Positions 33,886 to 59,119 of a stretch of DNA of 64,000 nt are shown here, piece after piece; the stretch's first letter is position 1; each line of letters begins with the position of its first letter. The translations under genes were made by a program, and so were the position numbers. The notes beneath the pieces are model-generated. The model was given only the letters and a program-made list of their open reading frames with translations, was not told the DNA's origin and did not search any database. Where the stretch lies: IMG/VR virus record IMGVR_UViG_3300032236_001613, positions 1 through 64,000 of that record. One strand, 5' to 3'.

Positions 33886-35102
33886 CCGTTTATATCGAGG
33901 ACTTAATCGAAAGAATGGCCGGGTCTGGCAAGTATCTTTTTGATGCACCTATTGCATCATCGGCAACAGACCGAACACTGTTTTATAGTTTTTCAAATCA
34001 AATTATAAACTGTGGATTAACTGAAAAACAGAAAAAGTTATGTGTATCGATATTAAAAAAATACAGTAGCGCACTTTCAAAAGATCTTAACTTAGATGTC
34101 GAATACTCTATAAAAAATAATATCTGGAGAACTCCTAGTAGGAACTTATCTTCGATAAAAAAAATAGAAATCGTTAAAAAAAATGGAAAGAACTCCTATA
34201 TTAATTTCGTCTCACCGTACGATCCTAAGTTAATAGAGGTCATAAAGGCTTATAAAAAGTCTAACGAAAGTACGATAACAGGCGTATCGACTTGGAACTC
34301 TACAGATAAGACATGGACATTTCCTCTATCAGAAAACTCTATTAAGTTTTTTGCGACTACTGATATATTTGATTCTTTTGAAAAAGAACGAGAGTTACTC
34401 GAACTTTATCAAGATATTGAACATATTGAAAAAAATATAGAACAATATATACCTATGGTAAGCGAAACTCCTGATGGAGGTTTTGTTTATCTTAATGTTT
34501 CTAAAAATATTCCTCAACCAACATCGAGGAATATAATTAATGTTCTATTGCATGCAAGAAAATACGGTATCACTATATGGACCGATCGAGTAAACGAATT
34601 ATTAAAAAATTGCGATACTAATAAAATAGTTAAAAAATTTCTTGAAATTGATTACTCCGAAAAGTTGTGTCCTTCATCAGGAGAGTTTCTGCTCGACGAT
34701 TTCTCTTCAGTTATTGACGAATACGACAATATTTTATTTGTTATTCCAGTTAATCACGAGATTAAATTTATTAAAAAAACTAAAGAATATTTAATAAGGC
34801 AGGGATATAAAACAGAGCAGATGTCAGTGCTTTTTAGATTAGAAAGTATGGTTGACCTACACGGATTTAACCAATATGTTAGAGATTCTCAGTTAAACAA
34901 CGAATTATCAGATGAAATAAAATTTGTATTCGTTAGTAGTAAATTACCTAAACCACTAATGGAATCACGAAAAAAGTTTGATTTAGTAATTAATTTTGGG
35001 TTAAACTCGTCACACTATTCTTTACAAAACTTTTTAAAAGAACACCACAACGTTATTACAATGTATCCTACATCAGGAAAAGATAAACATGTCCAGCTGT
35101 AA
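33882..35102 (+). CDS. hypothetical protein (406 aa)
   Basis: Long coupled ORF in replication operon; no catalytic motif recognised. Confidence 0.6.
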   Translation: MTVYIEDLIERMAGSGKYLFDAPIASSATDRTLFYSFSNQIINCGLTEKQKKLCVSILKKYSSALSKDLNLDVEYSIKNNIWRTPSRNLSSIKKIEIVKKNGKNSYINFVSPYDPKLIEVIKAYKKSNESTITGVSTWNSTDKTWTFPLSENSIKFFATTDIFDSFEKERELLELYQDIEHIEKNIEQYIPMVSETPDGGFVYLNVSKNIPQPTSRNIINVLLHARKYGITIWTDRVNELLKNCDTNKIVKKFLEIDYSEKLCPSSGEFLLDDFSSVIDEYDNILFVIPVNHEIKFIKKTKEYLIRQGYKTEQMSVLFRLESMVDLHGFNQYVRDSQLNNELSDEIKFVFVSSKLPKPLMESRKKFDLVINFGLNSSHYSLQNFLKEHHNVITMYPTSGKDKHVQL

Positions 35103-36567
35103 AATTATTATCAAAGACGAAGTTAATGTTAAGATTGACGGGTTAGATCTAGATACACGCAAAGACTTAGTAAAGAAATTTAAAATGGTGGATCCTACCG
35201 CTAGATTTAGACCATCATACCGTCTTGGGCGTTGGGACGGAACTGTTAGTTTCTTTGGTATTGGCGGAACTACTTATCTAAACATGTTAGATAAAGTCTT
35301 AGTCGAACTAGAAAATAGAAATTATCACATCGAAGTAGAAGATCTAAGAGAAAGCCCTCAACTAGAATTTGATAAAATTAACGAAGAGTTTTGGGGCGAT
35401 AAGTGTTGGCCGGAAGGACATCGTTTTGCAGGCGAACCCATTAGATTGCGAGACGATCAAGTAGAAGTAGTGAATACATTCCTAGCCAATCCTCAGGCAT
35501 TGCAAGAAGTCGCTACCGGTGCTGGTAAAACTATTATGACAGCAACTCTATCAAAGATTTGCGAAAAATACGGGCGTACAATTACTATTGTTCCTAACAA
35601 AAGCCTTGTAGAACAAACCGAAGAAGACTTTGTTAACGTAGGATTAGACGTAGGAGTTTATTACGGAGACAGAAAAGATCTTGGTAAAACTCATACAATC
35701 TGTACTTGGCAAAGCCTAAACATCTTAGATAAAAAATCTAAAAACTTTGAAGAAAGCAATGAACTGTTAACTTTATCAGAATTTTTAGAAGGTGTAAGTA
35801 CTGTTATTGTTGACGAAGTACATATGGCCAAAGCTGATGTACTTAAAAAACTATTAACACATAATCTAAAAAATACACCTATACGTTGGGGGTTGACAGG
35901 AACTGTTCCTAAGGAAGAGATTAATTTTCAAAATATTAAAGTTAGTCTTGGCGAAGTTGTAGGTAGAGTTAGCGCACACGATCTTCAACAAAAAGGAATC
36001 CTTAGTGAATGTCATGTAAACATTGTCCAAACCGGAGAGTGGAAAGAGTTTGCTAATTATGCCGAAGAGCTAAGATATCTTGTTACAGATCCTAAACGAT
36101 TAGAATATATTTCAGAACTAATTTCTAAAATATCTACAACAGGAAATACTTTAATTCTGGTTGACAGAATCGACTGCGGTAATGTATTATCAACTAACTT
36201 AGCAAATTTAACTAATCAACCTGTGTCTTTTATTTCAGGTGCAGTTAAGACTAAAGATCGTAAAGAGGAATACAATGAAGTTGCTACTAGCAATGATAAG
36301 ATTATTGTGGCTACTTATGGTGTGGCTGCTGTTGGTATTAATATTCCCCGTATTTTTAATCTTGTACTGCTCGAACCCGGTAAGTCGTTTGTTCGAGTTA
36401 TTCAAAGCATTGGACGCGGTATTCGAAAAGCTGAAGACAAGGATTTTGTCCAAATTTGGGATATAACTGCTGCTAGCAAATATGCTAAACGGCATCTTAC
36501 AGAACGTAAGAAGTTTTATAAAGAAGCTAAGTATGATTTTTCTATAGAAAAGGTACAATATCAATGA
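35089..36567 (+). CDS. uvsW: SF2 DNA helicase (UvsW-like)
   Basis: WDG, LRDDQ, ATGAGKT, DEVH, GLTGT, QSIGRGIR. Confidence 0.92.
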   Translation: MSSCKIIIKDEVNVKIDGLDLDTRKDLVKKFKMVDPTARFRPSYRLGRWDGTVSFFGIGGTTYLNMLDKVLVELENRNYHIEVEDLRESPQLEFDKINEEFWGDKCWPEGHRFAGEPIRLRDDQVEVVNTFLANPQALQEVATGAGKTIMTATLSKICEKYGRTITIVPNKSLVEQTEEDFVNVGLDVGVYYGDRKDLGKTHTICTWQSLNILDKKSKNFEESNELLTLSEFLEGVSTVIVDEVHMAKADVLKKLLTHNLKNTPIRWGLTGTVPKEEINFQNIKVSLGEVVGRVSAHDLQQKGILSECHVNIVQTGEWKEFANYAEELRYLVTDPKRLEYISELISKISTTGNTLILVDRIDCGNVLSTNLANLTNQPVSFISGAVKTKDRKEEYNEVATSNDKIIVATYGVAAVGINIPRIFNLVLLEPGKSFVRVIQSIGRGIRKAEDKDFVQIWDITAASKYAKRHLTERKKFYKEAKYDFSIEKVQYQ

Positions 36568-37955: not shown

Positions 37956-38381
37956 ATGTCAACTGATTCTTTATTTTATAAAATTTTTAACTTTGAAGGA
38001 AAAGAAGAAACTAAATTCTGTACTGATTGCAAAGAATGGTTACCTGTTTCAATGTTTGATAGAGATGGCGGAGCTAATTATCTTAGATATAATTGTAGAC
38101 CCTGCGCAAAAAAACATGCAAGAATTCTCAAAGAAATTAAGCGTACAGCTCCTAAGTTACCTGAAAATCACATTTGTCCAATATGTAAAAGAAGTGAAGA
38201 AGAAATTAAAAAAAATAATCCTACTAAAAAAGGTATTTGGTGTTGCGACCACGATCACGAAACTAGTAAATTTCGAGGGTGGATTTGCCAAAAATGTAAT
38301 TTAGCATTAGGCAATTTTAACGACGATCCGAACATTTTAGAAAATGGAAAACAATATCTTTTGCAATTTAAAAATAACTAG
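37956..38381 (+). CDS. endonuclease VII-family HNH protein
   Basis: CPIC...DHDH.T.KFRGWICQKCN.ALG.F.DD. Confidence 0.85.
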   Translation: MSTDSLFYKIFNFEGKEETKFCTDCKEWLPVSMFDRDGGANYLRYNCRPCAKKHARILKEIKRTAPKLPENHICPICKRSEEEIKKNNPTKKGIWCCDHDHETSKFRGWICQKCNLALGNFNDDPNILENGKQYLLQFKNN

Positions 38382-38390
38382 AGAGTATTA

Positions 38391-39086
38391 ATGGTAGACT
38401 TAGTAGAACAACCTTTTAATTGTGTACATTGTAATAAGAGTTTTATGAAAGAAAATACTCTTGTTGCGCATATGTGTGAAAATAAAAGACGTGCATTACA
38501 AAAAGACGAAAAACGTGTGCAAGTCGGTCTTATGGCCTACAATCGATTTTATCAAATAACTCAAAATTCAAGAAAAAATAAAACTTACGATGAATTTTGT
38601 AAAAGCTCATACTATAACGCATTTGTTAAATTTGGCAGTTTTATTAATAATGTTAATCCCCTTTATCCAGAAAAATTTATTGAGTATGTAATTAAAAGCG
38701 GAGTTAAATTAGATCACTGGAGCAGAGACGAGCTCTACGAAAAGTATCTTTATGAAACATTAAAAACAGAACCGGTTGAATCTGCAGTACAGAGATCTCT
38801 ACAAACTATGATGGAATGGGGTGATCGAAGCCAAGCACAGTATAACCACTATTTTAAATATGTTAATCATAATCGTGCGGTGCATGATATAAGGAATGGT
38901 AAAATATCACCATGGATCATATTAAATTGTAAGAGTGGAAAAACTATGATTGAGAACTTTAATGATGAACAGCTAAACTTAATTTCACCGGCATTTGATG
39001 TACCATACTGGATTAACCATTTTAAAAAACATCCAGCTGATATTGAGTTGGTTAAAGAAATTTGTCGTGAGGCAGATATTGAATGA
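38391..39086 (+). CDS. zinc-finger conserved hypothetical protein
   Basis: N-terminal CVHC.K.F..E.TL..H.C; GKISPW. Confidence 0.6.
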   Translation: MVDLVEQPFNCVHCNKSFMKENTLVAHMCENKRRALQKDEKRVQVGLMAYNRFYQITQNSRKNKTYDEFCKSSYYNAFVKFGSFINNVNPLYPEKFIEYVIKSGVKLDHWSRDELYEKYLYETLKTEPVESAVQRSLQTMMEWGDRSQAQYNHYFKYVNHNRAVHDIRNGKISPWIILNCKSGKTMIENFNDEQLNLISPAFDVPYWINHFKKHPADIELVKEICREADIE

Positions 39087-39661
39087 GTAATAGAGGTGAT
39101 ATAGATATCGATTTTGGAAATCGAGATGATTTGTTATCTCTAATTCCGCATGTTGCTGCTGCACGTTACGAGAGAGGAGAATTAAAAAAACATAACACTG
39201 GTGTGTATCTACAAAAGATCCCAGTAAATCCGATAAGTAATGTCGCAAGCATCGATTACGAAACCGCAGAAAAACGCGGCTATTTTAAACTAGATTTTTT
39301 GAATGTTAGTGTATACAAAGATGTTAAAAGTGAAGAGCATTTAATTAAATTAATGAACAAGGAGCCACTATGGAATCTTTTACTTCAAGACGAGTTTGTA
39401 AATCTGTTATTTCATTTAAAGGGGCACGGGGAGGTATTGAGAGCAACTTGCCCGAATTCAGTGGAACAATTAGCTGCAGTCCTTGCGATGATACGCCCCG
39501 CGAAACGCTATCTGATTGGGAAAGATTGGACTACGGTGATGAAAGAGATTTGGGTGAAACCGGATAACGACGAATATTATTTCAAAAAAGCACACAGTAT
39601 TTCTTACGCAATGCTAATTGTCGTTCAAATGAACTTAATATGTGAGCAATTGGAAGTTTAA
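39083..39661 (+). CDS. miniature DNA polymerase III alpha (C-family palm)-like protein
   Basis: DIDIDF, KHNTGV, KLDFL, LAAVLAMIRP, FKKAHSISYA correspond in order to DnaE motifs. Confidence 0.75.
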   Translation: MSNRGDIDIDFGNRDDLLSLIPHVAAARYERGELKKHNTGVYLQKIPVNPISNVASIDYETAEKRGYFKLDFLNVSVYKDVKSEEHLIKLMNKEPLWNLLLQDEFVNLLFHLKGHGEVLRATCPNSVEQLAAVLAMIRPAKRYLIGKDWTTVMKEIWVKPDNDEYYFKKAHSISYAMLIVVQMNLICEQLEV

Positions 39662-39662: not shown

Positions 39663-40052
39663 TTATTTTACTTTTTTAATGTTTCGAACTAGCTGGATTG
39701 ATTTTCTTTTGACTCTCTTTTCAGCTATTTCGCTTAAATTAACTATAGGCCCAAACAATATTTCTATATCTTTAGCATTAAATGTTTTAATATAGTCCCT
39801 AAAATAAATCATATCTCTTTTAAGAAAAATGCTAATAGGAATTTTTCTATTACTTTCCCACCACCAAATATCGCCTAATTCGAGTATTCTTTGTCGTTCT
39901 AAATCGTTGCGTAAACTAGAATAGTCGTACATGCTTAACACAGAATCGTCAGAATTGATAATAATACCTAAATATTCAATATCTCTGGATCTTACGCATG
40001 TAATAAATGGAAAATTTGTTTGGAATTGCTCTTTCAATATAGTCATGTACAA
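39663..40052 (-). CDS. conserved hypothetical protein
   Basis: FPFIT...EY.GII, WWWESNR.IPI. Confidence 0.6.
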   Translation of the reverse strand: MYMTILKEQFQTNFPFITCVRSRDIEYLGIIINSDDSVLSMYDYSSLRNDLERQRILELGDIWWWESNRKIPISIFLKRDMIYFRDYIKTFNAKDIEILFGPIVNLSEIAEKRVKRKSIQLVRNIKKVK

Positions 40053-40064: not shown

Positions 40065-40934
40065 ATGAAATTACCAGTCTATTTATATCCAAATCGTTTC
40101 GAAGTAATATTAGATTTGGATAATAACAACAGGATCATCCAAGTTATGTATCAACGCGAACTCAAATTACAAAAAGGTATTAAGAATACCATTCAATTAC
40201 AATTTAAAAATAGCGATCAAAAGCTCTTAAACGTTAGTACCTCTAACTTTGTAGTAACTCTATTTGATACCGTTAATAATCGTAACTTAATAGAAAAAGA
40301 TGTAACAATACTCGACGATGGTGTAACTCTTTCTTTGAGAGGATTAGCGTCGTTGGTATTCACTGAAAGCGATTTGGACGCTTGCGAAAGTACATACTAT
40401 AAACTAGGAATTAAAACTTTAGATAGCACCGGAAGTTATGTTCCTGCATACGCAGATACTTACTACGGCATGGCCGGAACAGTAGAAGTAAAGCACGACT
40501 TATATCCTACATTAATTCCAAGTATCGAAGTTAACGCCAATCAGTTTCAAATGTTTCCTAACTACGATATTAATGTACAACAGTACGAATATTACTCAGG
40601 AAACCTAGATGCTACTCCCCAGTTTAAATCAAATGTGGCGTTACATACTGCAGCTATCTATATGACAAACTATACCGGGCGAGTTTTACTCGAAGGAACT
40701 TTAGAAAACGACCCTAGTAGTTTCGGTAACTATGCATTAATTAGCAATACTACTTACACCGGTTTTACCGGAATTGATTACAAAAACTTTAACGGAATAT
40801 TTTCAAAAATAAGAATTAGATATATCCCAGCTAAAAACCCAGTCACAATGACTAATAGTTTATACAGCGGGCCAGATGCTGCCGCTAATCGTGCTTACGC
40901 CGGAACAGTTGACAAGGTACTATATAGAAGCTAA
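40065..40934 (+). CDS. late, probably structural beta-rich protein
   Basis: Late promoter TAAATA at 40053; KGIKN.IQ.QFKNSDQK. Confidence 0.5.
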   Translation: MKLPVYLYPNRFEVILDLDNNNRIIQVMYQRELKLQKGIKNTIQLQFKNSDQKLLNVSTSNFVVTLFDTVNNRNLIEKDVTILDDGVTLSLRGLASLVFTESDLDACESTYYKLGIKTLDSTGSYVPAYADTYYGMAGTVEVKHDLYPTLIPSIEVNANQFQMFPNYDINVQQYEYYSGNLDATPQFKSNVALHTAAIYMTNYTGRVLLEGTLENDPSSFGNYALISNTTYTGFTGIDYKNFNGIFSKIRIRYIPAKNPVTMTNSLYSGPDAAANRAYAGTVDKVLYRS

Positions 40935-40943: not shown

Positions 40944-41933
40944 ATGAATCTCATACAGTCTACACTTCAGATGGTTTTGCCATCTAAACGAAAAAACACC
41001 AGTGGAGGGTGGGTTTCGTTTAATTCCCCATGCTGCGTTAACCGTGGAGAAACTCGAGATACAAAATTAAGAGGTGGAGTTCTTTTTGAGAGTGACGGGT
41101 TTATCTATCATTGTTTTAATTGTGGGTTTAAAGCAGGGTGGAAGCCCGGTAAAAAACTAAGTAAGAACGCTAAAAATTTATTTAAATGGTGCGGAGTATC
41201 TGATGATGATGTAAATGCTTTGAGCTTTGAAGCATTCCGCAATATTAACAACGACGGAGAACCAATTAAAGAATTGGATCTTACATTAAAAGAAAGATCT
41301 TTACCCAAAGATACTTACTCTTTTGATGTATGGAATAGTTACGGATGTCAAGATGAAAATTTCATAGCTTGTAAGCAATACGTACTTGATAGGGGACTAG
41401 GGCTAGCAGATTATAAATGGCATTGGACGCCCGAACCTGGGTATCAAGATCGTGTTATAATACCCTTCTACCATGATAAGAAAATTGTTGGATATACTGG
41501 TAGAAAGATTTATCCAGGGAAGCCTAAGTATCTATCAGATAGCCAATCGGGGTATGTGTTCAATTTGGATGCTCAAACTTATGACAGAGAATTTGTTATT
41601 GTTGTAGAAGGGCAGATCGACGCAATTGCAATTAGCGGTTGCGCCATTATGACTAACGAACCTAATGAAATACAATGTATGAGAATTAACTCATTAGGTA
41701 AAAAAGTTATTGTGGTGCCTGATAGAGATAAAGCTGGAGCAAAGTTATTAGCTGCTGCAATACAAAATAACTGGGGAATGAGTTTACCTCCGTGGGATGA
41801 AGATATTAAAGACGTTGCAGATGCTGTAAAAAGGTACGGTAAGATTTATACACTTGCCACGATTGTGCACTATCAAGAAGATAATAAGATAAAAATAGAG
41901 TTACAAAAAAAGAAACTGGAGAAACTAACATAA
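40944..41933 (+). CDS. DNA primase (T4 gp61-like)
   Basis: Zn finger (PCC...YHCFNCG), RVIIPF, GR...PKY, TOPRIM VEG.IDA, PDRD.AG; sigma70 promoter TTGACA-17-TAAAAT just upstream. Confidence 0.9.
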   Translation: MNLIQSTLQMVLPSKRKNTSGGWVSFNSPCCVNRGETRDTKLRGGVLFESDGFIYHCFNCGFKAGWKPGKKLSKNAKNLFKWCGVSDDDVNALSFEAFRNINNDGEPIKELDLTLKERSLPKDTYSFDVWNSYGCQDENFIACKQYVLDRGLGLADYKWHWTPEPGYQDRVIIPFYHDKKIVGYTGRKIYPGKPKYLSDSQSGYVFNLDAQTYDREFVIVVEGQIDAIAISGCAIMTNEPNEIQCMRINSLGKKVIVVPDRDKAGAKLLAAAIQNNWGMSLPPWDEDIKDVADAVKRYGKIYTLATIVHYQEDNKIKIELQKKKLEKLT

Positions 41934-43387
41934 TGGATAAAACTGACTACAGCTATACTGTACAACGTTTATACTTAGAACTATTTCTAAGCGATGCGGA
42001 AACTTTTATTCGATGCCAAAATATCTTTGATCCAAAAAACTTTGATCAACGATTGAGAGCAACTGCGACTTTTATAAACGAATATGTAGACAAGTATAAA
42101 GTCATGCCCGAATCACAGATTGTTAATGCTAACTGCAAATCAGATCTGCAACCTATGGAAGTTCCAAAAGAAAACTATGAATGGTTAATGAATGACTTTG
42201 AAAATTTTAGTAGACATAAGGCTCTCGAACGAGCTATTAATGAAAGCGGCGAACTACTTATGTCCGGCGATTATGGCCCAGTAGAAAAGCTAATTAGAGA
42301 TGCTATTCAGATTAGTTTGAGCCGCGATATGGGTACAGACTATTGGTATGATCCGCGTGCTCGCTTAATGAAGCTAAAAGAAAACAATGGACAAATTTCT
42401 ACTGGTTGGCCTACTATGGATAAGAAGCTTTATGGCGGATTTAAGCGTGGTGAATTAGATATCTTTTGTGCAGGATCTGGTGGCGGTAAGAGTTTATTCT
42501 TAGCAAACCTTGCAGTAAACTTTGCAATACAAGGTCTTAATTGTATCTACTTTACTTTCGAGCTAAGTGAAGAACTTGTAGGCATGCGTATCGATAGTAT
42601 GGTTACAGGAACTAGTACTAAGGACATTTTCCGTAACTTAGATGACATCGAAATGAAGGTTCGTATGCTAGGTAAGAAGTCAGGAGGAATTCGTATAAAA
42701 TACCTCCCTTCTGGTAAGAATTGTAACGATTTGAGATCCTTTTTGAAGGAATATCAAGTCAAAACAGGCCATAAACCAGACATTATTTTAGTGGACTACT
42801 TAGACCTTATGATGCCTCTGTCGATCAAGGTAAGTCCAAGCGATCTTTTCGTTAAAGACAAATATGTCAGCGAAGAACTGCGTAATTTAGCTATGGAAAC
42901 ACAAACTGTAGTAGTTACAGCAAGTCAGTTAAATCGAGCAGCAGTTGAAGAAATTGAGTTTGATCATAGTCATATTTCCGGTGGATTAAGTAAGATTATG
43001 ACAGCAGATAACGTTATTGGTATCTTTACAAGCCGGGCTATGAGAGAACGGGGAAGCTATCAAATTCAGTTTATGAAAACACGTAGTAGTAGCGGCGTAG
43101 GCCAAAAGGTTGATTTAGAGTTTAATATCGAAACATTGCGTATTACTGATCCAGGCGAGGACGTTGAATCAAGCTTTAACCAACAACGATCAAATTCTAG
43201 CACTAGTAACATTGTAGAAAAATTTAAAAAGACTAGTACACTTAAGGATAATAATTTTGATAAAGAAACCGGCGAGGTACGAAACCCTGACCCTACTGCT
43301 GGAGTTCCTGTTGGTAAAATAAAAGCTACAACCGATAGCTCTCGTATTAGAGCAATGCTAGCAAATATCAATTCAGAAAAAGATTAA
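41933..43387 (+). CDS. replicative DnaB-family helicase (T4 gp41-like)
   Basis: STGW..D, GSGGGKS, TFELSE, VDYLDL, TASQLNR, K.R. Confidence 0.93.
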   Translation: MDKTDYSYTVQRLYLELFLSDAETFIRCQNIFDPKNFDQRLRATATFINEYVDKYKVMPESQIVNANCKSDLQPMEVPKENYEWLMNDFENFSRHKALERAINESGELLMSGDYGPVEKLIRDAIQISLSRDMGTDYWYDPRARLMKLKENNGQISTGWPTMDKKLYGGFKRGELDIFCAGSGGGKSLFLANLAVNFAIQGLNCIYFTFELSEELVGMRIDSMVTGTSTKDIFRNLDDIEMKVRMLGKKSGGIRIKYLPSGKNCNDLRSFLKEYQVKTGHKPDIILVDYLDLMMPLSIKVSPSDLFVKDKYVSEELRNLAMETQTVVVTASQLNRAAVEEIEFDHSHISGGLSKIMTADNVIGIFTSRAMRERGSYQIQFMKTRSSSGVGQKVDLEFNIETLRITDPGEDVESSFNQQRSNSSTSNIVEKFKKTSTLKDNNFDKETGEVRNPDPTAGVPVGKIKATTDSSRIRAMLANINSEKD

Positions 43388-43396: not shown

Positions 43397-44080
43397 ATGT
43401 CAAAATTTGTAACTCCTATAGTAATACATAAAAATCTTAATCTTGCAATTTGGGATAACGATCAATTGCGCCCAGACGTTAGAAAAGCACTACTGCGTAT
43501 TGCTAAGGAGTTCTACAAATTTTTAAAAGTATCCGCACCTATACAGGATATTGTTATATACGGAAGTCAAGCTAATTATAATTTTACATCTAAATCAGAT
43601 CTTGACTTACATATTGTTTTCGATTATAATGCTATTAAATGTGATGAACCAATAGATGCTTTATTCGATACTAAAAGGAAACTTTGGAAAGAACAACACG
43701 ATATTACTATTTACGGAGTTCCAATTGAGTTATATGCAGAAGATATTCGCGTTAAACCCGTAAGTGCAAGCTATAGTGTTTTAAGAAATTCCTGGATAAA
43801 ACATCCTAATATCGATAACATTGAATGGAACAAAAACGAAGTTAAATCATCGGTAAATTTTTGGCAACAACTTATTAATTCAACAATTAAGATACAAGAC
43901 TATCACGTAGCAGAAAAACTGTTAGCTGTTTTAGTAAAGTTTAGAAAGGTTGGCCTTAAACGTAACGGTGAGTTTGGACCAGAGAACTTAACTTTTAAAA
44001 GTTTGAGAAACTCTGGCGACATTGAAAAATTAAATGTTTTTATTAACAAAGTAAAAGATCAAAATTTAAGTTTAGACTAA
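43397..44080 (+). CDS. Pol-beta-superfamily nucleotidyltransferase
   Basis: hGS..NY....SDLDLH motif, IELY; late promoter. Confidence 0.75.
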   Translation: MSKFVTPIVIHKNLNLAIWDNDQLRPDVRKALLRIAKEFYKFLKVSAPIQDIVIYGSQANYNFTSKSDLDLHIVFDYNAIKCDEPIDALFDTKRKLWKEQHDITIYGVPIELYAEDIRVKPVSASYSVLRNSWIKHPNIDNIEWNKNEVKSSVNFWQQLINSTIKIQDYHVAEKLLAVLVKFRKVGLKRNGEFGPENLTFKSLRNSGDIEKLNVFINKVKDQNLSLD

Positions 44081-44088: not shown

Positions 44089-44601
44089 GTGAACAAAAGA
44101 ATTTATTTGGATATGGACGGTGTACTAGCTGATTGGAACACCGGAGTTGAAGGTATTCTGGGCTATAGGCGTAAAGATGCAAATGCTCATTACGATCCTA
44201 AAGATTGGGCAAAGGTTAGACAACATCAACGAATGTATCGAGATTTACCTGTAATGCCAGACGCCGAAAGGTTAGCCGATACAGCAAGAAAGTTTAGGGA
44301 TCAGTTAGGATGGGAGTTACTGATACTAACTGCTGTTCCTAAGGATAATGATTTTAAATGGGCATTCTGGGACAAGTTTGTATGGGCAAACAAATACTTT
44401 CCGGATATTCCTGTACACTTTGGGCCATATTCAAAAGATAAACAAAAACATTGTAAGCCCGGTGATATTCTAATTGACGATCGTAAAAGCAACTGCGATG
44501 AGTGGGAAGCAAAAGGCGGTGTTGCAATTAGAGTTACTAACGAACGTGTTGATCTAGCTATCGATGAATTAGAAGCAATGTTTAAAGAGTTAAACCTTTA
44601 G
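44089..44601 (+). CDS. HAD-family 5'(3')-deoxyribonucleotidase
   Basis: LDMDGVLAD, ILTA, K..W, LIDD. Confidence 0.88.
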   Translation: MNKRIYLDMDGVLADWNTGVEGILGYRRKDANAHYDPKDWAKVRQHQRMYRDLPVMPDAERLADTARKFRDQLGWELLILTAVPKDNDFKWAFWDKFVWANKYFPDIPVHFGPYSKDKQKHCKPGDILIDDRKSNCDEWEAKGGVAIRVTNERVDLAIDELEAMFKELNL

Positions 44602-52366: not shown

Positions 52367-52714
52367 ATGCATATCAAAGAACTGGTTACCTTAGACGAAC
52401 ACTGGCTACAAACAGCAGCTCAACAACTACAACCCGAACAACTACGTCAACGTTTACAAAACCTTGAACAATGGTTCTCCGACGAAGGCTCAGCTGCTGC
52501 AGATATGATCGAAACTTATAACGAATGGATACAGGGCACGGCAGATCCAGAATCAGTCCAAATGGCTAATCAACAACTGGTACGCTTGCTAAAATACTTG
52601 GGACTGGCCGGAATCGCTGTACTACCAGGTAGCACTTTCTTACTACCAGTCTTGATTAAAATAGCTCAACATTACGGCATAAAACTAATACCCGACCCTA
52701 TTAAACCACACTAA
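52367..52714 (+). CDS. small protein with hydrophobic C-terminal segment
   Basis: Start MHIKELVTLDE after TAAATA; LGLAGIAVLPG..LLPVLIK. Confidence 0.55.
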   Translation: MHIKELVTLDEHWLQTAAQQLQPEQLRQRLQNLEQWFSDEGSAAADMIETYNEWIQGTADPESVQMANQQLVRLLKYLGLAGIAVLPGSTFLLPVLIKIAQHYGIKLIPDPIKPH

Positions 52715-52758
52715 AATTTGATTGACAATCTTGATTATATTATAGTATATTACAATAT

Positions 52759-52956
52759 ATGATAATACGATATCTGGAAAATCCACATACTGGACTACTT
52801 ACACTGGTACGACACAACGATTTAGATTTAAAATGGGCTAGAAGATTAACTACATTGATTATACACGAGTTTGAACAAAATAGCCCAGAACATACTATGT
52901 TCTTACTACGCAACTTTAATCGACTACATAACAACGACATCGAAGATTGGACTTGA
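52759..52956 (+). CDS. hypothetical protein
   Basis: TTGACA promoter directly upstream. Confidence 0.45.
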   Translation: MIIRYLENPHTGLLTLVRHNDLDLKWARRLTTLIIHEFEQNSPEHTMFLLRNFNRLHNNDIEDWT

Positions 52957-52958
52957 TA

Positions 52959-53237
52959 CTAAAAACTAATACCATTGTCAACAAAATACCCTTCAACAAT
53001 GTTTCGAACTAATTGCGGGTGACAATGCACATACTCACTGCGTACCGTAAACCTGTCCTTTATTATGCTTAATATCCTGCTTTCATGCAACCGATCAGGT
53101 ATACTATACGTTTTTAAAAAATAACAACTGGGGTTGGCTGTCTTATATGCTCTTAGCCTACTACTGGGATTGCCTGTGATTCCTAACTTACAACGGTGCG
53201 GCTTGTCTGGATCTACCATGATATAATAATAAAGCAT
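52959..53237 (-). CDS. GIY-YIG/T5orf172-like protein
   Basis: YYIM...KLGIT.NP..RL..Y.TANP...E..I...EY. Confidence 0.7.
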   Translation of the reverse strand: MLYYYIMVDPDKPHRCKLGITGNPSSRLRAYKTANPSCYFLKTYSIPDRLHESRILSIIKDRFTVRSEYVHCHPQLVRNIVEGYFVDNGISF

Positions 53238-53297
53238 ACGGCTTATTTAATACTAGAATCACTATAACTACCCAAAAAAATTACTGCGCAAAATTTT

Positions 53298-53594
53298 TTA
53301 TGGTGGGAAATTTTTGAATGAGGCAGTTTTGACCCATGCATCAGGCACCATACGATGCTTGCTGACAAATAAATCATGCAATTGATCACCTGTGACATTA
53401 TAACGACGACAGACTTTTTGCATGATTTGATCAATTATGTCATAGTTAAACTTGAGCCCTTGACTGTGTCTGACCCTTAATGCACGCTCTAAAGCAGCTA
53501 CAGCTTTACTGGGATGAGGGGTTCCTGAAACATGTGCAGGCTTCATGGACTGTTGAGAATCAAATAGGTCGATTAAAGATCTTAAGGAACGCAT
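53298..53594 (-). CDS. small late protein
   Basis: TATAAATA-5-ATG; LHDLFVSKH...PD.W. Confidence 0.55.
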   Translation of the reverse strand: MRSLRSLIDLFDSQQSMKPAHVSGTPHPSKAVAALERALRVRHSQGLKFNYDIIDQIMQKVCRRYNVTGDQLHDLFVSKHRMVPDAWVKTASFKNFPP

Positions 53595-53947
53595 ACGAAT
53601 ATTTATATACATTGTAGAGAGGCCTATAGTACACGCAAAAAATTGCGCTGCAAAAAATAAAGACCACGCAGATCTCGGGGCCTGGTGGTTTTACGACCCC
53701 GGGGTATGGTTAGCAAGCCCCAACAGCAGCACAGCACGCAGCTGAGCACTATATACCTCCCGTGGGGTCTATATGCCTCCCACCTGAGCCGGCCGGCACA
53801 GCTGCCCCGGAAAATTTTTTCTTTTAGTTTTCCGAGAAAAAGATAGCTTATTGTGCCGTTGGGAGAGCCTCGCAATAAAAAAGCACGGGCTAGGGTTTTT
53901 GTAATTAGATAATAGTACAGTTGTGCTATATTATATACGCTGTTAGT

Positions 53948-54033
53948 AACCTGTGCATAGTAATATAACTGTAACGCAAATGCTAAGTTATTGTTTTTGT
54001 TAGCATTTTTTTAATTGCGTTACTACACAGGTT
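53948..54033 (+). other. long nested inverted repeat (hairpin/cruciform or structured RNA)
   Basis: AACCTGTG/CACAGGTT, GTAACGCAA/TTGCGTTAC, AAATGCTAA/TTAGCATTT. Confidence 0.7.
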
Positions 54034-54426
54034 CCCGTTAATTAAAAAAGCGCAGTGCAGTTTGTGTGCACGGGGTAGTCCCCGTGTTAATAAAAATACA
54101 CAGTTGCAGTACCTGCAGCAACGCAGTGGGAGGTGCCCCTCGATTACATCAGCTGCTGTGCAGATTTTTTAGTGGGGTCTGGTTGACAGAGTTAACTTAA
54201 CTGTTAAACTTAACATATGCAAACAGCAGCACATACAACACGCAGTCAACAACAGCAGGAGCAGGGTGTGTGCGTGCGCTGCTGGGAGGTCTCTCGCAAA
54301 GCAGTCTTTAAACTGCGCTGTGCGTTACTGGGAGAATCCCGTGTTTGCAAAAGCAGCGCACACGTTTGTGCAATTGGGAGAATCCCTAGTTTGTTGCTGC
54401 TGCACGCAAAAGTGCACCAGTGGGAA

Positions 54427-54515
54427 GATTACAAAAACTTAATCTAATAGTGCTTGCAACTGCTGTTGCCGGCGCTATACTACATAACGTAGCAATAGTG
54501 CTACAGCACGCACAA
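54427..54515 (+). promoter_or_regulatory. early promoter cassette, copy 1
   Basis: GATTACAAAAACTTAAT-10-TTGCAA-16-TATACT-GTAGC/GCTAC hairpin-AGCACGCAC. Confidence 0.75.
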
Positions 54516-54528
54516 TAGGAATCTGTAT

Positions 54529-54816
54529 ATGCCCTCGTATCGTATTCGTTTGCTTGCCAATGGCGAAGTTGAGATTGCTGTCAACAGCCGCCGCGCACGT
54601 GGTCGTGTAGTAGCTGAAAAGACTGTTGAGGTTGAAGAGCCCGCAGCAGCAAAGCGTCAGACCAAAGCAGCGCAAGTGCGCGACAAGATCCGTCAAGTCA
54701 AGCCTGTAATGGGTGATGCTGGGCGCCGCGTTGTTAGCGCATGGGCACGCACAAAGTTGGGTATGAATCCTAGCATGGCTGCTACTTATGTGAAAAACAA
54801 CTGGACCTGCTGCTAG
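54529..54816 (+). CDS. basic early hypothetical protein
   Basis: AGGA SD after cassette; C-terminal LGM...A.TY..N. Confidence 0.7.
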   Translation: MPSYRIRLLANGEVEIAVNSRRARGRVVAEKTVEVEEPAAAKRQTKAAQVRDKIRQVKPVMGDAGRRVVSAWARTKLGMNPSMAATYVKNNWTCC

Positions 54817-55016
54817 TTTACAGCAGAAGAGAGCAGTAGCATTAGTGCTGCTGCTCTCACCAGTTGTATTCTAAGAGTTGGGTTTGGGCCGGCGGGGTTT
54901 GACCCCATAGCAGTTTCTGCAATGCTAAGGCCTTTAGCGGGGTATTCAAGAATAAAGGTTGATCTGTAGATAACTACTGTTATACTAACAGCGTTAAGCA
55001 CGCTAAGGAGTTTGTT

Positions 55017-55127
55017 ATGGCTCGTGTTAAGAAGAATGGGTGCCTAATGGCACGTAAGACCCGACAAGTTAAACATGCCGGATATAAGTGCGCTGCAACT
55101 GGGCGCTGGCGCCGAGGGTTCAAATAA
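55017..55127 (+). CDS. 36-aa Arg/Lys-rich peptide
   Basis: MARVKKNGCLMARKTRQVKHAGYKCAATGRWRRGFK; TAAGGAG SD and promoter upstream. Confidence 0.6.
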   Translation: MARVKKNGCLMARKTRQVKHAGYKCAATGRWRRGFK

Positions 55128-55225
55128 TGGCTAAGGTACGGCGTCCTCGTAATCAACAGCGTGTGTTGCAGCAGCGAATTGCCTGCAGCCGTGTGGGCGG
55201 ATGTCGTCCAAAACGGAGCCGCTAA
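55127..55225 (+). CDS. 32-aa Arg-rich peptide
   Basis: MAKVRRPRNQQRVLQQRIACSRVGGCRPKRSR; TAATG coupling. Confidence 0.55.
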   Translation: MAKVRRPRNQQRVLQQRIACSRVGGCRPKRSR

Positions 55226-55362
55226 TGTTAATCGACGATGAATCCGAAGACTATTACGAGCGTCGTGTGGCTCGTGCTGATGCTGCTTTCGATCTCTTTA
55301 TTGATTGGACTAGTGTTGCAGCCATGATTGGGATCGTGTTATATTTGTTGCTGCGTTGTTAA
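55225..55362 (+). CDS. 45-aa peptide with C-terminal TM helix
   Basis: MLIDDESEDYYERR...VAAMIGIVLYLLLRC; TAATG coupling, GGAG SD. Confidence 0.55.
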   Translation: MLIDDESEDYYERRVARADAAFDLFIDWTSVAAMIGIVLYLLLRC

Positions 55363-55389
55363 ACGTTTTCCTGTGTGTTGTGCATGGTT

Positions 55390-55418
55390 GGGCGGAGTTC
55401 GCATCCGCCCTTTTTTTT
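55390..55418 (+). terminator. intrinsic terminator
   Basis: GGGCGGA-7-TCCGCCC T8. Confidence 0.9.
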
Positions 55419-55540
55419 AGCTGGCTGCGGTCTCGGGGTTCCTCCCACTAACAGCGTTTTGGTATAATACTCCTGCTGCAGTATGTGTTGGGAGGCGCCC
55501 CAGTGTTTAAAATGTTTGTGCGCTATTTTCTTATTGGGAT

Positions 55541-55637
55541 GATTACAAAAGCTTAATGTTAAAGTGCTTGCTTTATTTTTGTGTGTGCTTATAATAGCAA
55601 TTGTAGCAATAAAGCTACGCATAAAATAAGCACGCAC
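55541..55637 (+). promoter_or_regulatory. early promoter cassette, copy 2
   Basis: GATTACAAAAGCTTAAT-10-TTGCTT-16-TATAAT-GTAGC/GCTAC-AGCACGCAC. Confidence 0.7.
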
Positions 55638-55638
55638 T

Positions 55639-55875
55639 ATGTACACATTGGAAGTTAGCTATCCGTTGACGCTGTATTGGAACAGCATTAACGTAGATCG
55701 GGAGATCTCTGAAGCTGTTAATGCTACGAGCACAGGCAGCGGAGCGGGATTTGGGCAACGTGATCTCACGTTCCGCTTTACAACTGCAGAGGCTGCTAAT
55801 GCTGCTGCAGAGCGAGCACGACGTATACACGCTAGCATCTCGTGCAACGTGTCTGCTGACGCTTACTACGCTTAA
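55639..55875 (+). CDS. early hypothetical protein
   Basis: Follows cassette 2; GSGAGFGQRDL.F.F. Confidence 0.65.
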   Translation: MYTLEVSYPLTLYWNSINVDREISEAVNATSTGSGAGFGQRDLTFRFTTAEAANAAAERARRIHASISCNVSADAYYA

Positions 55876-56020
55876 ACAACTGCCTCGTTACGCACAGCTG
55901 AAAATGCTGTGCGTGCAGGCGGGGTCAGAATCCCAGGAAGAAAAAATTGCAAAGCTCGATGCAGGGGTGGGGTCAGATCCCGTGCAAACTTTTACGCAAA
56001 CTTTTGCAAGACAGTGAGAT

Positions 56021-56110
56021 GATTACAAAAACTTAATGCAAAAACAGGTTGCAACTGCTACTAGACTTGCTATGCTACATAACGTAGCGATACTGCTACA
56101 GCACGCACAA
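56021..56110 (+). promoter_or_regulatory. early promoter cassette, copy 3
   Basis: GATTACAAAAACTTAAT-11-TTGCAA-16-TATGCT-ACATAACGTAGC..GCTACAGCACGCACAA. Confidence 0.75.
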
Positions 56111-56120
56111 AGGGTTAGAT

Positions 56121-56423
56121 ATGAACGAGATTGCTAAAGCCCTAATCACACTCGCTAGCGAGATTAAGGAGCAGGCGGGCCCTGTCTCACTGATCTTCCA
56201 TGCAGCAGGAAGTCAGGGCGACTTTGAGACCGCGTTGTACATCTTCAACGACAAGAGTCTCTTCAACGCTACTTACTTCACTGAAGAAGAGCTTGAGAAG
56301 TTTAACCTCATCATGCCCGCTATTGCAGATGGGCTCAACAAGTTGCAGAAGTTTGACGAGCAAATTGCTGCATTAGATGCCGCTAAGTACCACTCAGCAG
56401 ACTATCTCAAAGCAGTTAACTGA
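56121..56423 (+). CDS. early hypothetical protein
   Basis: Follows cassette 3; terminator at about 56435-56466. Confidence 0.7.
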   Translation: MNEIAKALITLASEIKEQAGPVSLIFHAAGSQGDFETALYIFNDKSLFNATYFTEEELEKFNLIMPAIADGLNKLQKFDEQIAALDAAKYHSADYLKAVN

Positions 56424-56631
56424 CACATAGCCGGCGCATAGTAGGGAACTGCTATGCGCTTTTTTGTTGCCGTTAAGAACCCCGCAGAAGGTTTTTACGC
56501 ACATGTATATAAAGTCTCGGGGTAGCCCCAAGGACTGCAGCCGCAAACGTGAACGAGGTCTAGCGGGGTATTTAAAAAGGTTGACGGGCTGTAGTTGTGT
56601 CTGTATGCTTGTGCTGCTAAAGGAGCACGCA

Positions 56632-56739
56632 ATGAACTTTAAGTACTTCGCACCATGGCTTTTTGCATTCATCTTATTACTGTTGGGACACTTTACTGCT
56701 GCTATCTGCATTGCCGTGTTGATCTTGCTCTGCAGCTGA
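56632..56739 (+). CDS. 35-aa hydrophobic membrane peptide
   Basis: MNFKYFAPWLFAFILLLLGHFTAAICIAVLILLCS; TTGACG-17-TATGCT promoter, AAGGAG SD. Confidence 0.6.
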   Translation: MNFKYFAPWLFAFILLLLGHFTAAICIAVLILLCS

Positions 56740-56820
56740 AAAATCTTTGTGAGGCAGAGTTGACAGCGTTGTTGCAACGTGTAAACTACTAATGTAGAAC
56801 TAATAACAAGGATCTCATTT

Positions 56821-57024
56821 ATGCACGCTAAGTTCAAAATTGTAGATCGTAAGACTGGAGTTGTACTCTACGACCAAGTGCACGGAGTCGGTCGCGCCAC
56901 GCACTTGCTGTATGGTGCTCGTGCAAGTAATACGCGAGTGTTCAAGACTGATGAGCGAGGCTCGCGTGAAATTACTCTCAACTTTAATATTTGGCAGCTG
57001 GAAAACGGCTTACGGGAGGCTTAA
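56821..57024 (+). CDS. early hypothetical protein
   Basis: TTGACA promoter at 56761, AAGGA SD. Confidence 0.65.
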   Translation: MHAKFKIVDRKTGVVLYDQVHGVGRATHLLYGARASNTRVFKTDERGSREITLNFNIWQLENGLREA

Positions 57025-57203
57025 TGGCTATGCTACAGCGTTACCGTTGCTCGGGCATTGACGGTATGGACAAGGACCATCAGGGAGATTGGGTTCGTTA
57101 CGAAGACTATCTCTCACTGTTACAGAAGTTGGATGAAATCCGCATAAATCTTCTCCAGCTTCGCGATCCACGTTATCGGGACATCCAAAAGGAATTCAAA
57201 TGA
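57024..57203 (+). CDS. early hypothetical protein
   Basis: TAATG coupling, GGAGG SD; G.WVRYED motif. Confidence 0.6.
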   Translation: MAMLQRYRCSGIDGMDKDHQGDWVRYEDYLSLLQKLDEIRINLLQLRDPRYRDIQKEFK

Positions 57204-57445
57204 AAACCAATGACATTAAGAAAGGTCAGCGTATCCAGCAACGTAATGGCTGGTACGGGACTATGTTTGATGACAAGAAGGGCAACATCCGTTGCGTTGA
57301 AGTTGAAGGTGACTTCAAAGAGATTGGGAGTGTTTACGCACACGAGATTATTCGTGCGCAGGATGCTAACGGTGTTTGGCACACAGTCGAACACACCGAA
57401 GCTCAGATGAAACTTAAGTCCAAGTTGGGTGCCATGGGGTGGTAA
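57200..57445 (+). CDS. early hypothetical protein (SH3-like beta)
   Basis: ATGA overlap, AAGGA SD; IKKG.R...GSVY.H.I. Confidence 0.65.
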   Translation: MKTNDIKKGQRIQQRNGWYGTMFDDKKGNIRCVEVEGDFKEIGSVYAHEIIRAQDANGVWHTVEHTEAQMKLKSKLGAMGW

Positions 57446-57539
57446 CACCTTTGTACAGGTACTGTTGATCTTCACAGTAGACAAAAGGTTGGCGAACTCT
57501 TTATAATAGAGGAGTTCGCTAATCCTATGGAGATCAGAG

Positions 57540-57638
57540 ATGTTTGGTCGTCGAAAGGCTACTGTGCGAAAGGTTCGTTCAACGCCTCGTTCGCGTGCTG
57601 CTTACGGTTCTACTACGACTCGCCGCCGTAAGCGTTAA
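57540..57638 (+). CDS. 32-aa protamine-like Arg-rich peptide
   Basis: MFGRRKATVRKVRSTPRSRAAYGSTTTRRRKR; own promoter, GGAG SD and terminator. Confidence 0.6.
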   Translation: MFGRRKATVRKVRSTPRSRAAYGSTTTRRRKR

Positions 57639-57673
57639 TGATTTTGCGTGCTGCCGCAATGATGCGGCACTTT

Positions 57674-57711
57674 GGGCAATCGTGTTTAGCACCTCGATTG
57701 CCCTTTTTTTT
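57674..57711 (+). terminator. intrinsic terminator
   Basis: GGGCAATCG-12-CGATTGCCC T8. Confidence 0.85.
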
Positions 57712-57856
57712 ATCTGTTGATTCTGCTGCGGGGTATTCCCACTGGCTAAACAATCTACCTATATATACCAGTGCACTATAAGTGAGAACAAGAGCTTAGA
57801 CTGATCTTAATCTACATAAGCCTTACACACCGACGATTTCGTAGTTTTTGGCTTTG

Positions 57857-57993: not shown

Positions 57994-58202
57994 TCATTAG
58001 AGTGGAACTACCGATCAAATAGATTAAAAAGATTAGATGATGAAAGAGTTGGTCTTAGTTTTCCGGCCGGGGTTGCCCCGTGATCTAATAATAGCACGGT
58101 TTGGTCGAGATCTGTTTACATTCTTTAAAGACGGGGCCAGGTTGACAGATTTAACTTAACGCATTAATATTGGCGTTGTAAACAATAATTGGAGCAGCTG
58201 AG

Positions 58203-59118: not shown

Positions 59119-59119
59119 T

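What the first reader, a model, noticed from the sequence alone, without database searches (positions are those of the whole stretch)
39083..39661. 192-aa miniature Pol III alpha-like protein keeping the catalytic aspartate motifs
Seen: DIDIDF, KHNTGVY, KLDFL, LAMIRP and FKKAHSISYA appear in DnaE order but within 192 aa; DnaE is about 1100+ aa. PHP, OB and clamp-binding regions are absent. The ORF has clean start and stop and is coupled to a Zn-finger gene, in a T4-type replisome neighbourhood where a family B polymerase is expected. Inference: a minimal C-family nucleotidyltransferase repurposed for priming, repair, base modification or signalling, perhaps with 38391..39086 as a subunit, rather than a decayed pseudogene.
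Basis: partly seen in the sequence, partly recalled or inferred. Interest (0 to 1): 0.65.

Follow-up and report, generated by a model that had tools for sequence, protein, structure and literature searches.

The report
Half of a split mini-polymerase
This 192-residue gene of an uncultured jumbo phage is the second half of a two-gene, stripped-down relative of the bacterial replicative DNA polymerase (Pol III alpha); the family was described by computation in 2021, so it is a real but known curiosity that nobody has yet tested at the bench.

Summary
It is not a self-contained miniature polymerase. It is the C-terminal half of the "minimal, split DNA polymerase III alpha" that Iyer et al. (2021, PMC7824862) described in Rak2/PA5oct/Atu_ph07-type jumbo phages.

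- **Missing half.** The other half (177 aa, with the GRGS nucleotide-binding loop) lies 192 kb away in the same 328-kb phage genome, at G000:C1:230701-231234.
- **Split point.** It falls inside the catalytic Pol-beta-type fold, between E. coli residues L392 and M399. It is the same in 80 loci fetched with the C half and 80 further loci fetched with the N half.
- **Assembly.** A co-fold of the two halves scores 0.91 against 0.01 for the best control. One natural 375-aa fusion exists.
- **Conservation.** The three carboxylates (E. coli D401, D403, D555) are kept in at least 138 of 140 divergent family representatives. dN/dS is about 0.13.
- **What is absent.** The ORF lacks the thumb and about half of the fingers region it spans. 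Pfam's PHP, fingers and clamp-binding (HHH_6) models find nothing in the genome.
- **Zn-finger neighbour.** It is a syntenic core gene, but nothing marks it as a subunit.

Polymerase activity is inferred, not shown.

The parts
39083..39661 (+). C-terminal half (192 aa) of the split minimal Pol III alpha. It carries the metal-binding carboxylates D6/D8 and D71 (E. coli D401/D403 and D555), plus K69, R138-P139, and H171/Y175 (E. coli H760/Y764).
   Evidence: (phrog_11778, E 3e-71).
39069..39086 (+). Translation start region: GAGG about 10 nt upstream, and an ATGA overlap of the start codon with the stop of the upstream gene.
   Evidence: read directly from the sequence. The coupling itself is inferred.
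38391..39086 (+). Context, not shown to be a part. A 231-aa protein with an N-terminal Zn knuckle (invariant C11, C14, H27, C29) and an all-helical body. It is a conserved upstream neighbour of unknown function.
   Evidence: (phrog_11058).
39663..40052 (-). Context. A 129-aa protein on the opposite strand that converges on the C half. It is seen beside the C half in 76 of the 80 fetched loci (most of the others end before it) and next to the one fused gene. Function unknown.
   Evidence: (phrog_11637).
35089..36567 (+). Context. A UvsW-type SF2 helicase at the head of the conserved replication module.
40944..43387 (+). Context. A DnaG-type primase (40944-41933) and a DnaB-like helicase (41933-43387) downstream in the same module.

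Best explanation
The ORF encodes the C-terminal subunit of a two-gene, minimal C-family (DnaE-type) polymerase core found in Rak2/PA5oct/Atu_ph07-like jumbo phages.

This subunit supplies the beta-strand with the DxD metal ligands, the strand with the third aspartate, and a shortened fingers helix bundle. The 177-aa N-terminal subunit is encoded 192 kb away, at G000:C1:230701-231234, outside the window. It supplies the preceding strand and the GRGS triphosphate-binding loop of the same Pol-beta-type fold.

Neither half can form the active site alone. The two associate non-covalently: the IVWGV strand of the N half pairs with the DIDIDF strand of the C half. Together they rebuild a catalytic core of about 370 aa without a thumb, and the genome shows no PHP, full fingers or clamp-binding (HHH_6) domain.

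The most likely activity (inferred, about even odds) is short-range, DNA-templated dNTP addition. That would fit gap filling, repair, or a specialised step beside the phage's T4-like family B replicase.

Shown here: identity, the split, conservation, selection, and a model-supported interface. Inferred: actual binding, catalysis, substrate and biological role.
For: - **Family.** phrog_11778 'DNA polymerase', E 3e-71. The protein is found in 96 phage records, all of this jumbo-phage clade. The published description is in PMC7824862, section 3.4.1.
- **Other half.** A PF07733 match of 45.5-47.6 bits lies in a 177-aa ORF of the same genome. It is found in 93 phage records with the same host distribution, and in 4 of 5 large contigs that carry one or other half; the one without it is only 42% complete.
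- **Split point.** The N half ends at EFLK/R and the C half starts at (P)DIDIDF in 80 C-half loci and 80 further N-half loci. This corresponds to E. coli L392 | M399.
- **Structure.** pLDDT 90.3. All 13 top matches are C-family polymerases, with Z up to 9.8.
- **Assembly.** ipSAE 0.91 against a best control of 0.01. That mark was reached by 58 of 80 solved complexes and 2 of 110 mismatched pairs. The runs share at least 93% of contacts and the partner's pLDDT is at least 85. The closest contacts are C-half residues 9-11 with N-half residues 136-138.
- **Natural fusion.** P0070 (375 aa) joins both halves in the right order through an 8-aa linker.
- **Conservation in 150 representatives of 50%-identity clusters.** D6 127/127, D8 127/127, K69 140/140, D71 138/140, H171 112/116.
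- **Selection.** Median dN/dS 0.127, maximum 0.25, over 64 pairs.
- **Main replicase.** A family B polymerase is present in a 906-aa ORF.
Against: - No biochemical or genetic data exist for any member in the papers I could search.
- The co-fold may score high from memory of intact DnaE structures, so it shows likeness rather than binding (caveat printed).
- The E. coli segment 642-751 aligns to only about 22 residues here. From memory, that segment holds finger residues that contact the incoming nucleotide. The thumb region, within E. coli 421-538, is reduced to about 31 residues. Primer-template grip and normal dNTP positioning may therefore be lost.
- The Pfam RNase_T model finds no DnaQ-type exonuclease in this genome.
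- Only one fused form was seen, on a 2.4-kb contig, and it has no close relatives in IMG/VR.
Confidence: 0.75

Rival explanations
1. The reconstituted two-piece enzyme is a nucleotidyltransferase but not a templated DNA polymerase. It could be a terminal transferase, a primer-extending or priming enzyme, or a maker of a nucleotide signal or of modified DNA ends, used in counter-defence.
For: - The thumb is lost, about half of the fingers region spanned is gone, and Pfam models find no clamp-binding (HHH_6) or PHP domain in the genome.
- The E. coli segment 642-751 is nearly absent.
- The phage already has a complete family B polymerase.
- Another Pol-beta-superfamily nucleotidyltransferase sits 3.7 kb downstream, so such enzymes are in use here.
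Against: - The retained finger motif FxKxH...Y (E. coli F756-Y764) is nearly invariant. From memory, H760 is the residue that excludes ribonucleotides in Pol III alpha, which would point to dNTP use on DNA.
- The gene sits in a helicase-primase module that keeps its order across the clade.
Confidence: 0.2
2. One reading: the 192-aa protein is a self-sufficient miniature nucleotidyltransferase, perhaps with the Zn-finger protein at 38391-39086 as its subunit.
For: - The start of this ORF overlaps the stop of the Zn-finger gene.
- The Zn-finger gene lies upstream of the C half in 77 of the 80 loci (the other three start too close to the gene to show it) and in distant phages.
Against: - The ORF lacks the GRGS loop and its strand, which are encoded elsewhere and predicted to pair with it.
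- The fused natural form joins the N and C halves, not the Zn-finger protein and the C half.
- The Zn-finger gene is separated from the C half by up to 2.2 kb in IMG/VR loci, and by 3.6-10 kb in phages SCTP-2 and Xoo-sp13.
- Its model (pLDDT 92.6) has no significant structural match, with a best Z of 4.5.
- I did not co-fold the Zn-finger protein with the C half, because only one such job was allowed.
Confidence: 0.04
3. The gene is a decaying remnant of a captured dnaE gene, with no function.
For: Large parts of DnaE are missing, and the gene is in two pieces.
Against: - dN/dS is about 0.13.
- The family has 543 clusters at 50% identity, nearly all of them 185-215 aa long.
- The catalytic residues are conserved.
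- Both halves are kept together in phages infecting alpha- and gammaproteobacteria.
Confidence: 0.01
4. The two halves are joined covalently after translation by a split intein, as in cyanobacterial DnaE.
For: Cyanobacterial dnaE is also encoded in two distant pieces (from general knowledge).
Against: - There is no room for intein fragments. The N half ends 0-5 residues after EFLK, and the C half starts 0-7 residues before DIDIDF.
- The natural fusion needs only an 8-residue linker.
Confidence: 0.01

Closest known systems
Minimal split DNA polymerase III alpha of group 2.2 jumbo phages (Iyer, Anantharaman, Krishnan, Burroughs and Aravind 2021, Viruses 13:63; PHROG 11778; for example PA5oct EST35_0220 with EST35_0288, and Atu_ph07 gp316 for the N half)
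   Same: - Same family (E 3e-71, 40-55% identity to isolates).
- Same two-gene architecture with distant genes.
- Same companion family B polymerase.
- Same replication-module synteny.
   Different: Nothing essential differs. This copy comes from an uncultured 328-kb phage (an IMG/VR record). New here, beyond the paper's text as I read it:
- the exact split point and how constant it is;
- the model-supported interface;
- one natural fusion;
- the family's size;
- the dN/dS estimate.
Bacterial Pol III alpha, DnaE (E. coli, Taq, M. tuberculosis DnaE1) and PolC
   Same: - Pol-beta-type palm with D401/D403/D555 equivalents.
- K553, R639-P640 and the FNKSH...Y (756-764) motif are kept.
- Structural match with Z 8.7-9.8 over about 190 residues.
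   Different: - About 370 aa in two chains, against 1160 aa in one.
- No thumb; Pfam's PHP, full-fingers and HHH_6 models find nothing.
- E. coli 421-538, 562-596 and 642-751 are largely deleted.
- Pfam's PF07733 model sees only the N half.
Cyanobacterial split DnaE joined by a split intein
   Same: A C-family polymerase encoded by two genes far apart in the genome.
   Different: - The split site differs. Here it lies inside the palm between the GS loop and the DxD strand.
- There are no intein fragments.
- Assembly must be non-covalent.

Membership tests
C-family DNA polymerase catalytic core (Pol III alpha / DnaE) | Three catalytic carboxylates on the Pol-beta-type palm (E. coli D401, D403, D555). 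| tested here: met
   D6, D8 and D71 align to D401, D403 and D555. They are invariant in 37 sequences and kept in 127/127, 127/127 and 138/140 cluster representatives.
C-family DNA polymerase catalytic core (Pol III alpha / DnaE) | The GS (GRGS) triphosphate-binding loop in the same polypeptide. | tested here: not met
   It is absent from the 192-aa ORF. It is present in the separate 177-aa protein P0002 (G140-S143, equal to E. coli G361-S364), encoded 192 kb away.
C-family DNA polymerase catalytic core (Pol III alpha / DnaE) | PHP domain, thumb, full fingers, and beta-clamp-binding/HhH and OB domains. | tested here: not met
   Pfam PHP, DNA_pol3_finger and HHH_6 find nothing in the genome. 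The model covers E. coli 397-781 with only 190 residues. The thumb-containing segment 421-538 is reduced to about 31 residues. An OB domain was not searched for in the genome.
C-family DNA polymerase catalytic core (Pol III alpha / DnaE) | Template-directed DNA synthesis. | not testable with these tools
   No experimental report was found.
Split minimal Pol III alpha of group 2.2 jumbo phages (Iyer et al. 2021; PHROG 11778) | A protein of about 190 aa that begins at the DxDxDF strand and matches the family profile. | tested here: met
   phrog_11778, E 3e-71, covering 3-189 of 192 residues. All 45 non-redundant relatives start within 8 residues of DIDIDF.
Split minimal Pol III alpha of group 2.2 jumbo phages (Iyer et al. 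2021; PHROG 11778) | A separate N-terminal, NTP-binding half encoded at a distant locus of the same genome. | tested here: met
   G000:C1:230701-231234, PF07733 at 45.5-47.6 bits.
Split minimal Pol III alpha of group 2.2 jumbo phages (Iyer et al. 2021; PHROG 11778) | It accompanies a classic family B polymerase in a T4-related jumbo phage. | tested here: met
   PF00136 at 122 bits in a 906-aa ORF at 248 kb. The genome is 328 kb. A UvsW-like helicase, endonuclease VII, a DnaG primase and DnaB are in the window.
Split minimal Pol III alpha of group 2.2 jumbo phages (Iyer et al. 2021; PHROG 11778) | The two halves assemble into one enzyme. | tested here: inconclusive
   The co-fold scores 0.91 against a best control of 0.01, and a natural fusion exists. 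Both support assembly, but neither is a binding measurement.
Split-intein DnaE | Intein N- and C-fragments at the split ends. | tested here: not met
   No extra residues at either end. The fusion has an 8-aa linker.

The most novel reading that the evidence does not exclude
The pair is a working DNA polymerase of only about 370 residues whose single catalytic beta-sheet is assembled from two polypeptides made from separate genome modules. That would make it the smallest C-family polymerase core known. Because activity needs both halves, the split could also act as a switch that limits activity to the time or place where both are present. The alternative held by Iyer et al., that it preserves the ancestral form of Pol III, is not excluded either.
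Probability: 0.3. Interest if true: 0.7.

Novelty: new member of a known kind. Interest (0 to 1): 0.4.

Why it matters
C-family polymerases replicate all bacterial chromosomes. Their origin is unresolved, and no version this small has been studied. A two-piece core of about 370 aa would define the minimum needed for catalysis in this family. It would also give a compact model for structure and engineering work, and might show what a second polymerase does beside the T4-type replicase in a widespread clade of jumbo phages (543 sequence clusters at 50% identity).

For this scan the practical message is smaller. The finding is a correct spot of a family already described, and the reading 'stand-alone miniature enzyme' should be replaced by 'one half of a split enzyme'.

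Tried and rejected
- **Pfam on the C half:** no hit. Only PHROGs and structure comparison identify it.
- **Megablast of 36-42 kb against phages:** no match.
- **Profile against PDB sequences:** only weak hits (E 0.008), though collinear.
- **Foldseek alone:** E 2e-3. VIA-align was needed for clear Z-scores.
- **Zn-finger protein as a missing DnaE domain or a gp59-like loader:**
  - Foldseek gave nothing significant; T4 gp59 came at rank 6 with TM 0.28.
  - The wide search gave a best Z of 4.5.
  - I dropped the idea as unsupported.
- **DnaQ-type proofreader in the genome (Pfam RNase_T model):** none.
- **Split-intein idea:** rejected on lengths.
- **More fused forms:** P0070 has no close relative in IMG/VR. 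None of 80 further N-half loci has a C half within 1.5 kb. Six apparent C-terminal extensions were tblastn read-through into the next gene.
- **Expression evidence:**
  - The main text of the PA5oct transcriptome paper does not name these genes, and its supplements are not held.
- **PaBG and Sharanji papers:** these mention only other Pol III subunits or bare annotation.
- **A slip of my own:** a first residue-conservation count was mis-registered because of trimming. I redid it correctly.
- **Not used:** The search for homologous proteins, because its length window would have missed fused forms and the family scans had already settled the identity.

Full report
**1. The observation**

The ORF at window 39083-39661 (+) translates to 192 residues with an ATG start and a TGA stop.

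The start codon overlaps the stop of the upstream gene (ATGA), and a GAGG lies about 10 nt upstream. The flanking genes are replication genes:
- a UvsW-type helicase at 35089-36567;
- endonuclease VII at 37956-38381;
- a DnaG-type primase at 40944-41933;
- a DnaB-like helicase at 41933-43387.

The window is the first 64 kb of a 328,068-bp virus record that is estimated 92% complete.

**2. What the protein is**

Pfam does not recognise the protein. PHROGs does: phrog_11778 'DNA polymerase', E 3e-71 over residues 3-189, plus a weak hit to the middle of a 1190-position polymerase profile.

tblastn finds it in 96 phage records at 40-55% identity. All are Rak2, GAP32, 121Q, PA5oct, Atu_ph07, Phosso, SCTP-2 or Xanthomonas-type jumbo phages. 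Some records annotate it as 'DnaE-like DNA polymerase III alpha'.

A 37-sequence alignment from IMG/VR loci (A1) shows these invariant residues: D6, D8, D10, K69, D71, R138, P139, K141, H171 and Y175. As a profile it aligns collinearly to M. tuberculosis DnaE1 and to E. coli DnaE:

| This protein | E. coli DnaE |
|---|---|
| D6 / D8 / D10 | D401 / D403 / D405 |
| K69 / D71 | K553 / D555 |
| R138-P139 | R639-P640 |
| F167...H171...Y175 | F756...H760...Y764 |

The AlphaFold model is confident (pLDDT 90.3, pTM 0.77). In Foldseek the first 16 matches are all Pol III alpha or PolC chains (E from 2e-3). With VIA-align, 190 of the 192 residues superpose on several C-family structures:
- Taq Pol III alpha 458-838: Z 9.8, rmsd 3.6 A.
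- M. tuberculosis DnaE1 416-808: Z 9.2.
- E. coli alpha 399-781: Z 8.7.
- The best unrelated chain scores Z 3.0.

So the protein spans about 385 residues of DnaE with half as many of its own. E. coli 421-538 (which contains the thumb), 562-596 and 642-751 are mostly deleted.

**3. It is only half of the catalytic fold**

The protein begins right at the DxD strand. In the Pol-beta-type fold this strand pairs with a preceding strand that leads into the GS triphosphate-binding loop, and that element is not in the ORF.

A search of the phage's own genome with Pfam PF07733 found one match (45.5 bits, above the cut-off) at 230989-231228. It lies in a 177-aa ORF, G000:C1:230701-231234 (+). That ORF ends ...IVWGVGRGSSVSSYCLYLIGVHKIDSLKYGLDINEFLKGEKDG. 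Its profile aligns to E. coli DnaE 320-392, with GRGS equal to G361-S364.

The gene is therefore cut between E. coli L392 and M399, inside the palm, and the two pieces lie 192 kb apart. Searches with the Pfam PHP, DNA_pol3_finger, HHH_6 and RNase_T models found nothing in the genome. A family B polymerase lies in a 906-aa ORF at 248 kb.

**4. This is a published family**

Iyer et al. 2021 (PMC7824862, sections 3.4.1 and 3.5) describe this arrangement in group 2.2 jumbo phages. [quoted passage not shown]

The Atu_ph07 genome paper had already annotated the N half as a Pol III alpha subunit. I found no experimental work on either half.

**5. Tests added here**

- **Constancy of the split.**
  - In 80 IMG/VR loci fetched with the C half, the ORF starts within a few residues of (P)DIDIDF.
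  - In 21 loci and 80 further loci fetched with the N half, the ORF stops 0-9 residues after EFLK/R.
  - None of those 80 further N-half loci has a C half within 1.5 kb.
- **Co-occurrence.**
  - The C half is in 96 phage records and the N half in 93, with the same host distribution.
  - The N half is found in 4 of 5 large metagenomic contigs that carry one or other half. The exception is only 42% complete.
- **Assembly.**
  - A co-fold of the two alignments scores 0.91 in all three runs, against 0.01 for the best of three controls.
  - That mark was reached by 58 of 80 solved complexes and by 2 of 110 mismatched pairs.
  - The runs share at least 93% of contacts, and the partner's pLDDT is at least 85.
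  - The tightest contacts are C-half residues 9-11 with N-half residues 136-138, which is the expected strand pairing.
  - The tool warns that such a pass can come from memory of intact DnaE, so it shows likeness rather than binding.
- **A natural fusion.**
  - A profile search of 1.84 billion cluster representatives found 543 clusters at E <= 1e-3 and 149 at E <= 1e-30. Of the 150 listed, 96 are at least 180 aa long (median 192); the shorter ones look like fragments.
  - One listed protein, P0070, is 375 aa. Residues 15-185 are an N half (32% identity to P0002, E 1e-22), followed by an 8-residue linker and a C half starting DFDID.
  - It is one uninterrupted ORF on a 2.4-kb metagenome contig. 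Its downstream neighbour is a homologue of the window's 39663-40052 gene.
  - I saw it only once.
- **Catalytic residues in divergent members (150 representatives).**
  - D6 127/127, D8 127/127, D10 122/127.
  - K69 140/140, D71 138/140.
  - R138 118/122, H171 112/116.
- **Selection.** Nei-Gojobori dN/dS over 64 pairs at 70-98% amino-acid identity has a median of 0.127 and a maximum of 0.25. Against its three closest relatives the window gene scores 0.11-0.14.

**6. The Zn-finger neighbour**

The 231-aa protein at 38391-39086 has a C2H2-type knuckle (Pfam zf-C2H2_jaz, E 3.6e-5) with invariant C11, C14, H27 and C29.

It lies upstream of the C half in 77 of the 80 IMG/VR loci; the other three start too close to the gene to show it. 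The gap varies from overlap to 2.2 kb there. In isolates it is adjacent in PA5oct, 1.1 kb away in Phosso, 3.6 kb in SCTP-2 and about 10 kb in Xoo-sp13.

It is a core gene of the clade (94 records), as are both polymerase halves, so co-occurrence says nothing specific. Its model is confident (pLDDT 92.6) but has no significant structural relative. I could not co-fold it with the C half because only one such job was allowed. A role as a subunit is neither supported nor excluded.

**7. How it most likely works**

Shown:
- the ORF is one of two conserved, selected pieces of a C-family palm plus a partial fingers domain;
- the cut lies within the catalytic sheet;
- the pieces are predicted to pair, and they occur fused once.

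Inferred:
- the two proteins assemble non-covalently into one active site;
- that site uses two metals on D6/D8/D71, with the triphosphate held by the GRGS loop of the partner;
- the enzyme adds dNTPs to a primer on DNA.

The near-invariant FxKxH...Y motif argues for DNA-type chemistry. From memory, not tested here, E. coli H760 is the residue that excludes ribonucleotides.

Without a thumb, and with no clamp-binding domain or proofreader detected in the genome, the enzyme should be distributive and error-prone. That fits gap filling, repair or a specialised priming-extension step better than bulk replication, which the family B enzyme presumably performs. Iyer et al. also suggest synthesis of one strand, or repair. 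A non-polymerase nucleotidyl-transfer role cannot be excluded, since E. coli 642-751 is almost wholly missing.

**8. Verdict**

The system is already in the literature as a computational prediction, so this copy is a new member of a known kind. What remains interesting is that nobody has tested the enzyme.

Noticed in passing
window 38391-39086 (+): A 231-aa protein with an N-terminal Zn knuckle (invariant C11, C14, H27, C29) and a confident all-helical model (pLDDT 92.6) that has no significant match in the PDB. It is a core gene of the Rak2/PA5oct/Atu_ph07 clade (94 phage records) and is always upstream of the polymerase C half. Its function is unknown.
   Followed up: partly
window 39663-40052 (-): A 129-aa protein (phrog_11637, unknown function) that converges on the C half in 76 of the 80 related loci (most of the others end before it), and also next to the single fused N+C gene on contig L106 (33% identity, E 4e-4). 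This is tighter linkage than for the Zn-finger gene.
   Followed up: partly
window 40065-40934 (+): A 289-aa protein inside the replication module that matches a PHROG of virion structural proteins (E 2e-12). The gene at the same position in PA5oct (EST35_0222) is annotated as a structural protein found by mass spectrometry. It is an odd place for a virion protein.
   Followed up: no
window 43397-44080 (+) and 44089-44601 (+): Directly after the DnaB-like helicase lie a 227-aa Pol-beta-superfamily nucleotidyltransferase (PF18765 E 1e-5; PF01909 above its cut-off) and a 170-aa NT5C-type deoxyribonucleotidase (E 7e-7). The first is a second, unrelated small nucleotidyltransferase in the same module.
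   Followed up: partly
L003:1739-2753 (G000:C1:231227-232241), outside the window: The N half of the polymerase is followed by a conserved protein of about 88 aa, a Cpn10/GroES-like co-chaperonin (E 6e-8) and a MazG/PRA-PH-type pyrophosphohydrolase (E 2e-10). The small protein also follows the N half in other IMG/VR loci, and PA5oct has a small gene and then a chaperonin at the same position.
   Followed up: partly
window 52700-64000: GC content rises to 45-48%, against about 35% in the replication module. The stretch has only short ORFs (few of 150 aa or more) and one tRNA-Lys(UUU) at 62240-62314 (-). No other Rfam family matches anywhere in the window.
   Followed up: no
L106:1066-2193 (ENA metagenome contig, 2415 bp): A single 375-aa ORF (P0070) in which the N and C halves of the mini Pol III alpha are fused through an 8-residue linker. 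It is the only fused form among the 150 best cluster representatives, and it has no close relative in IMG/VR.
   Followed up: yes
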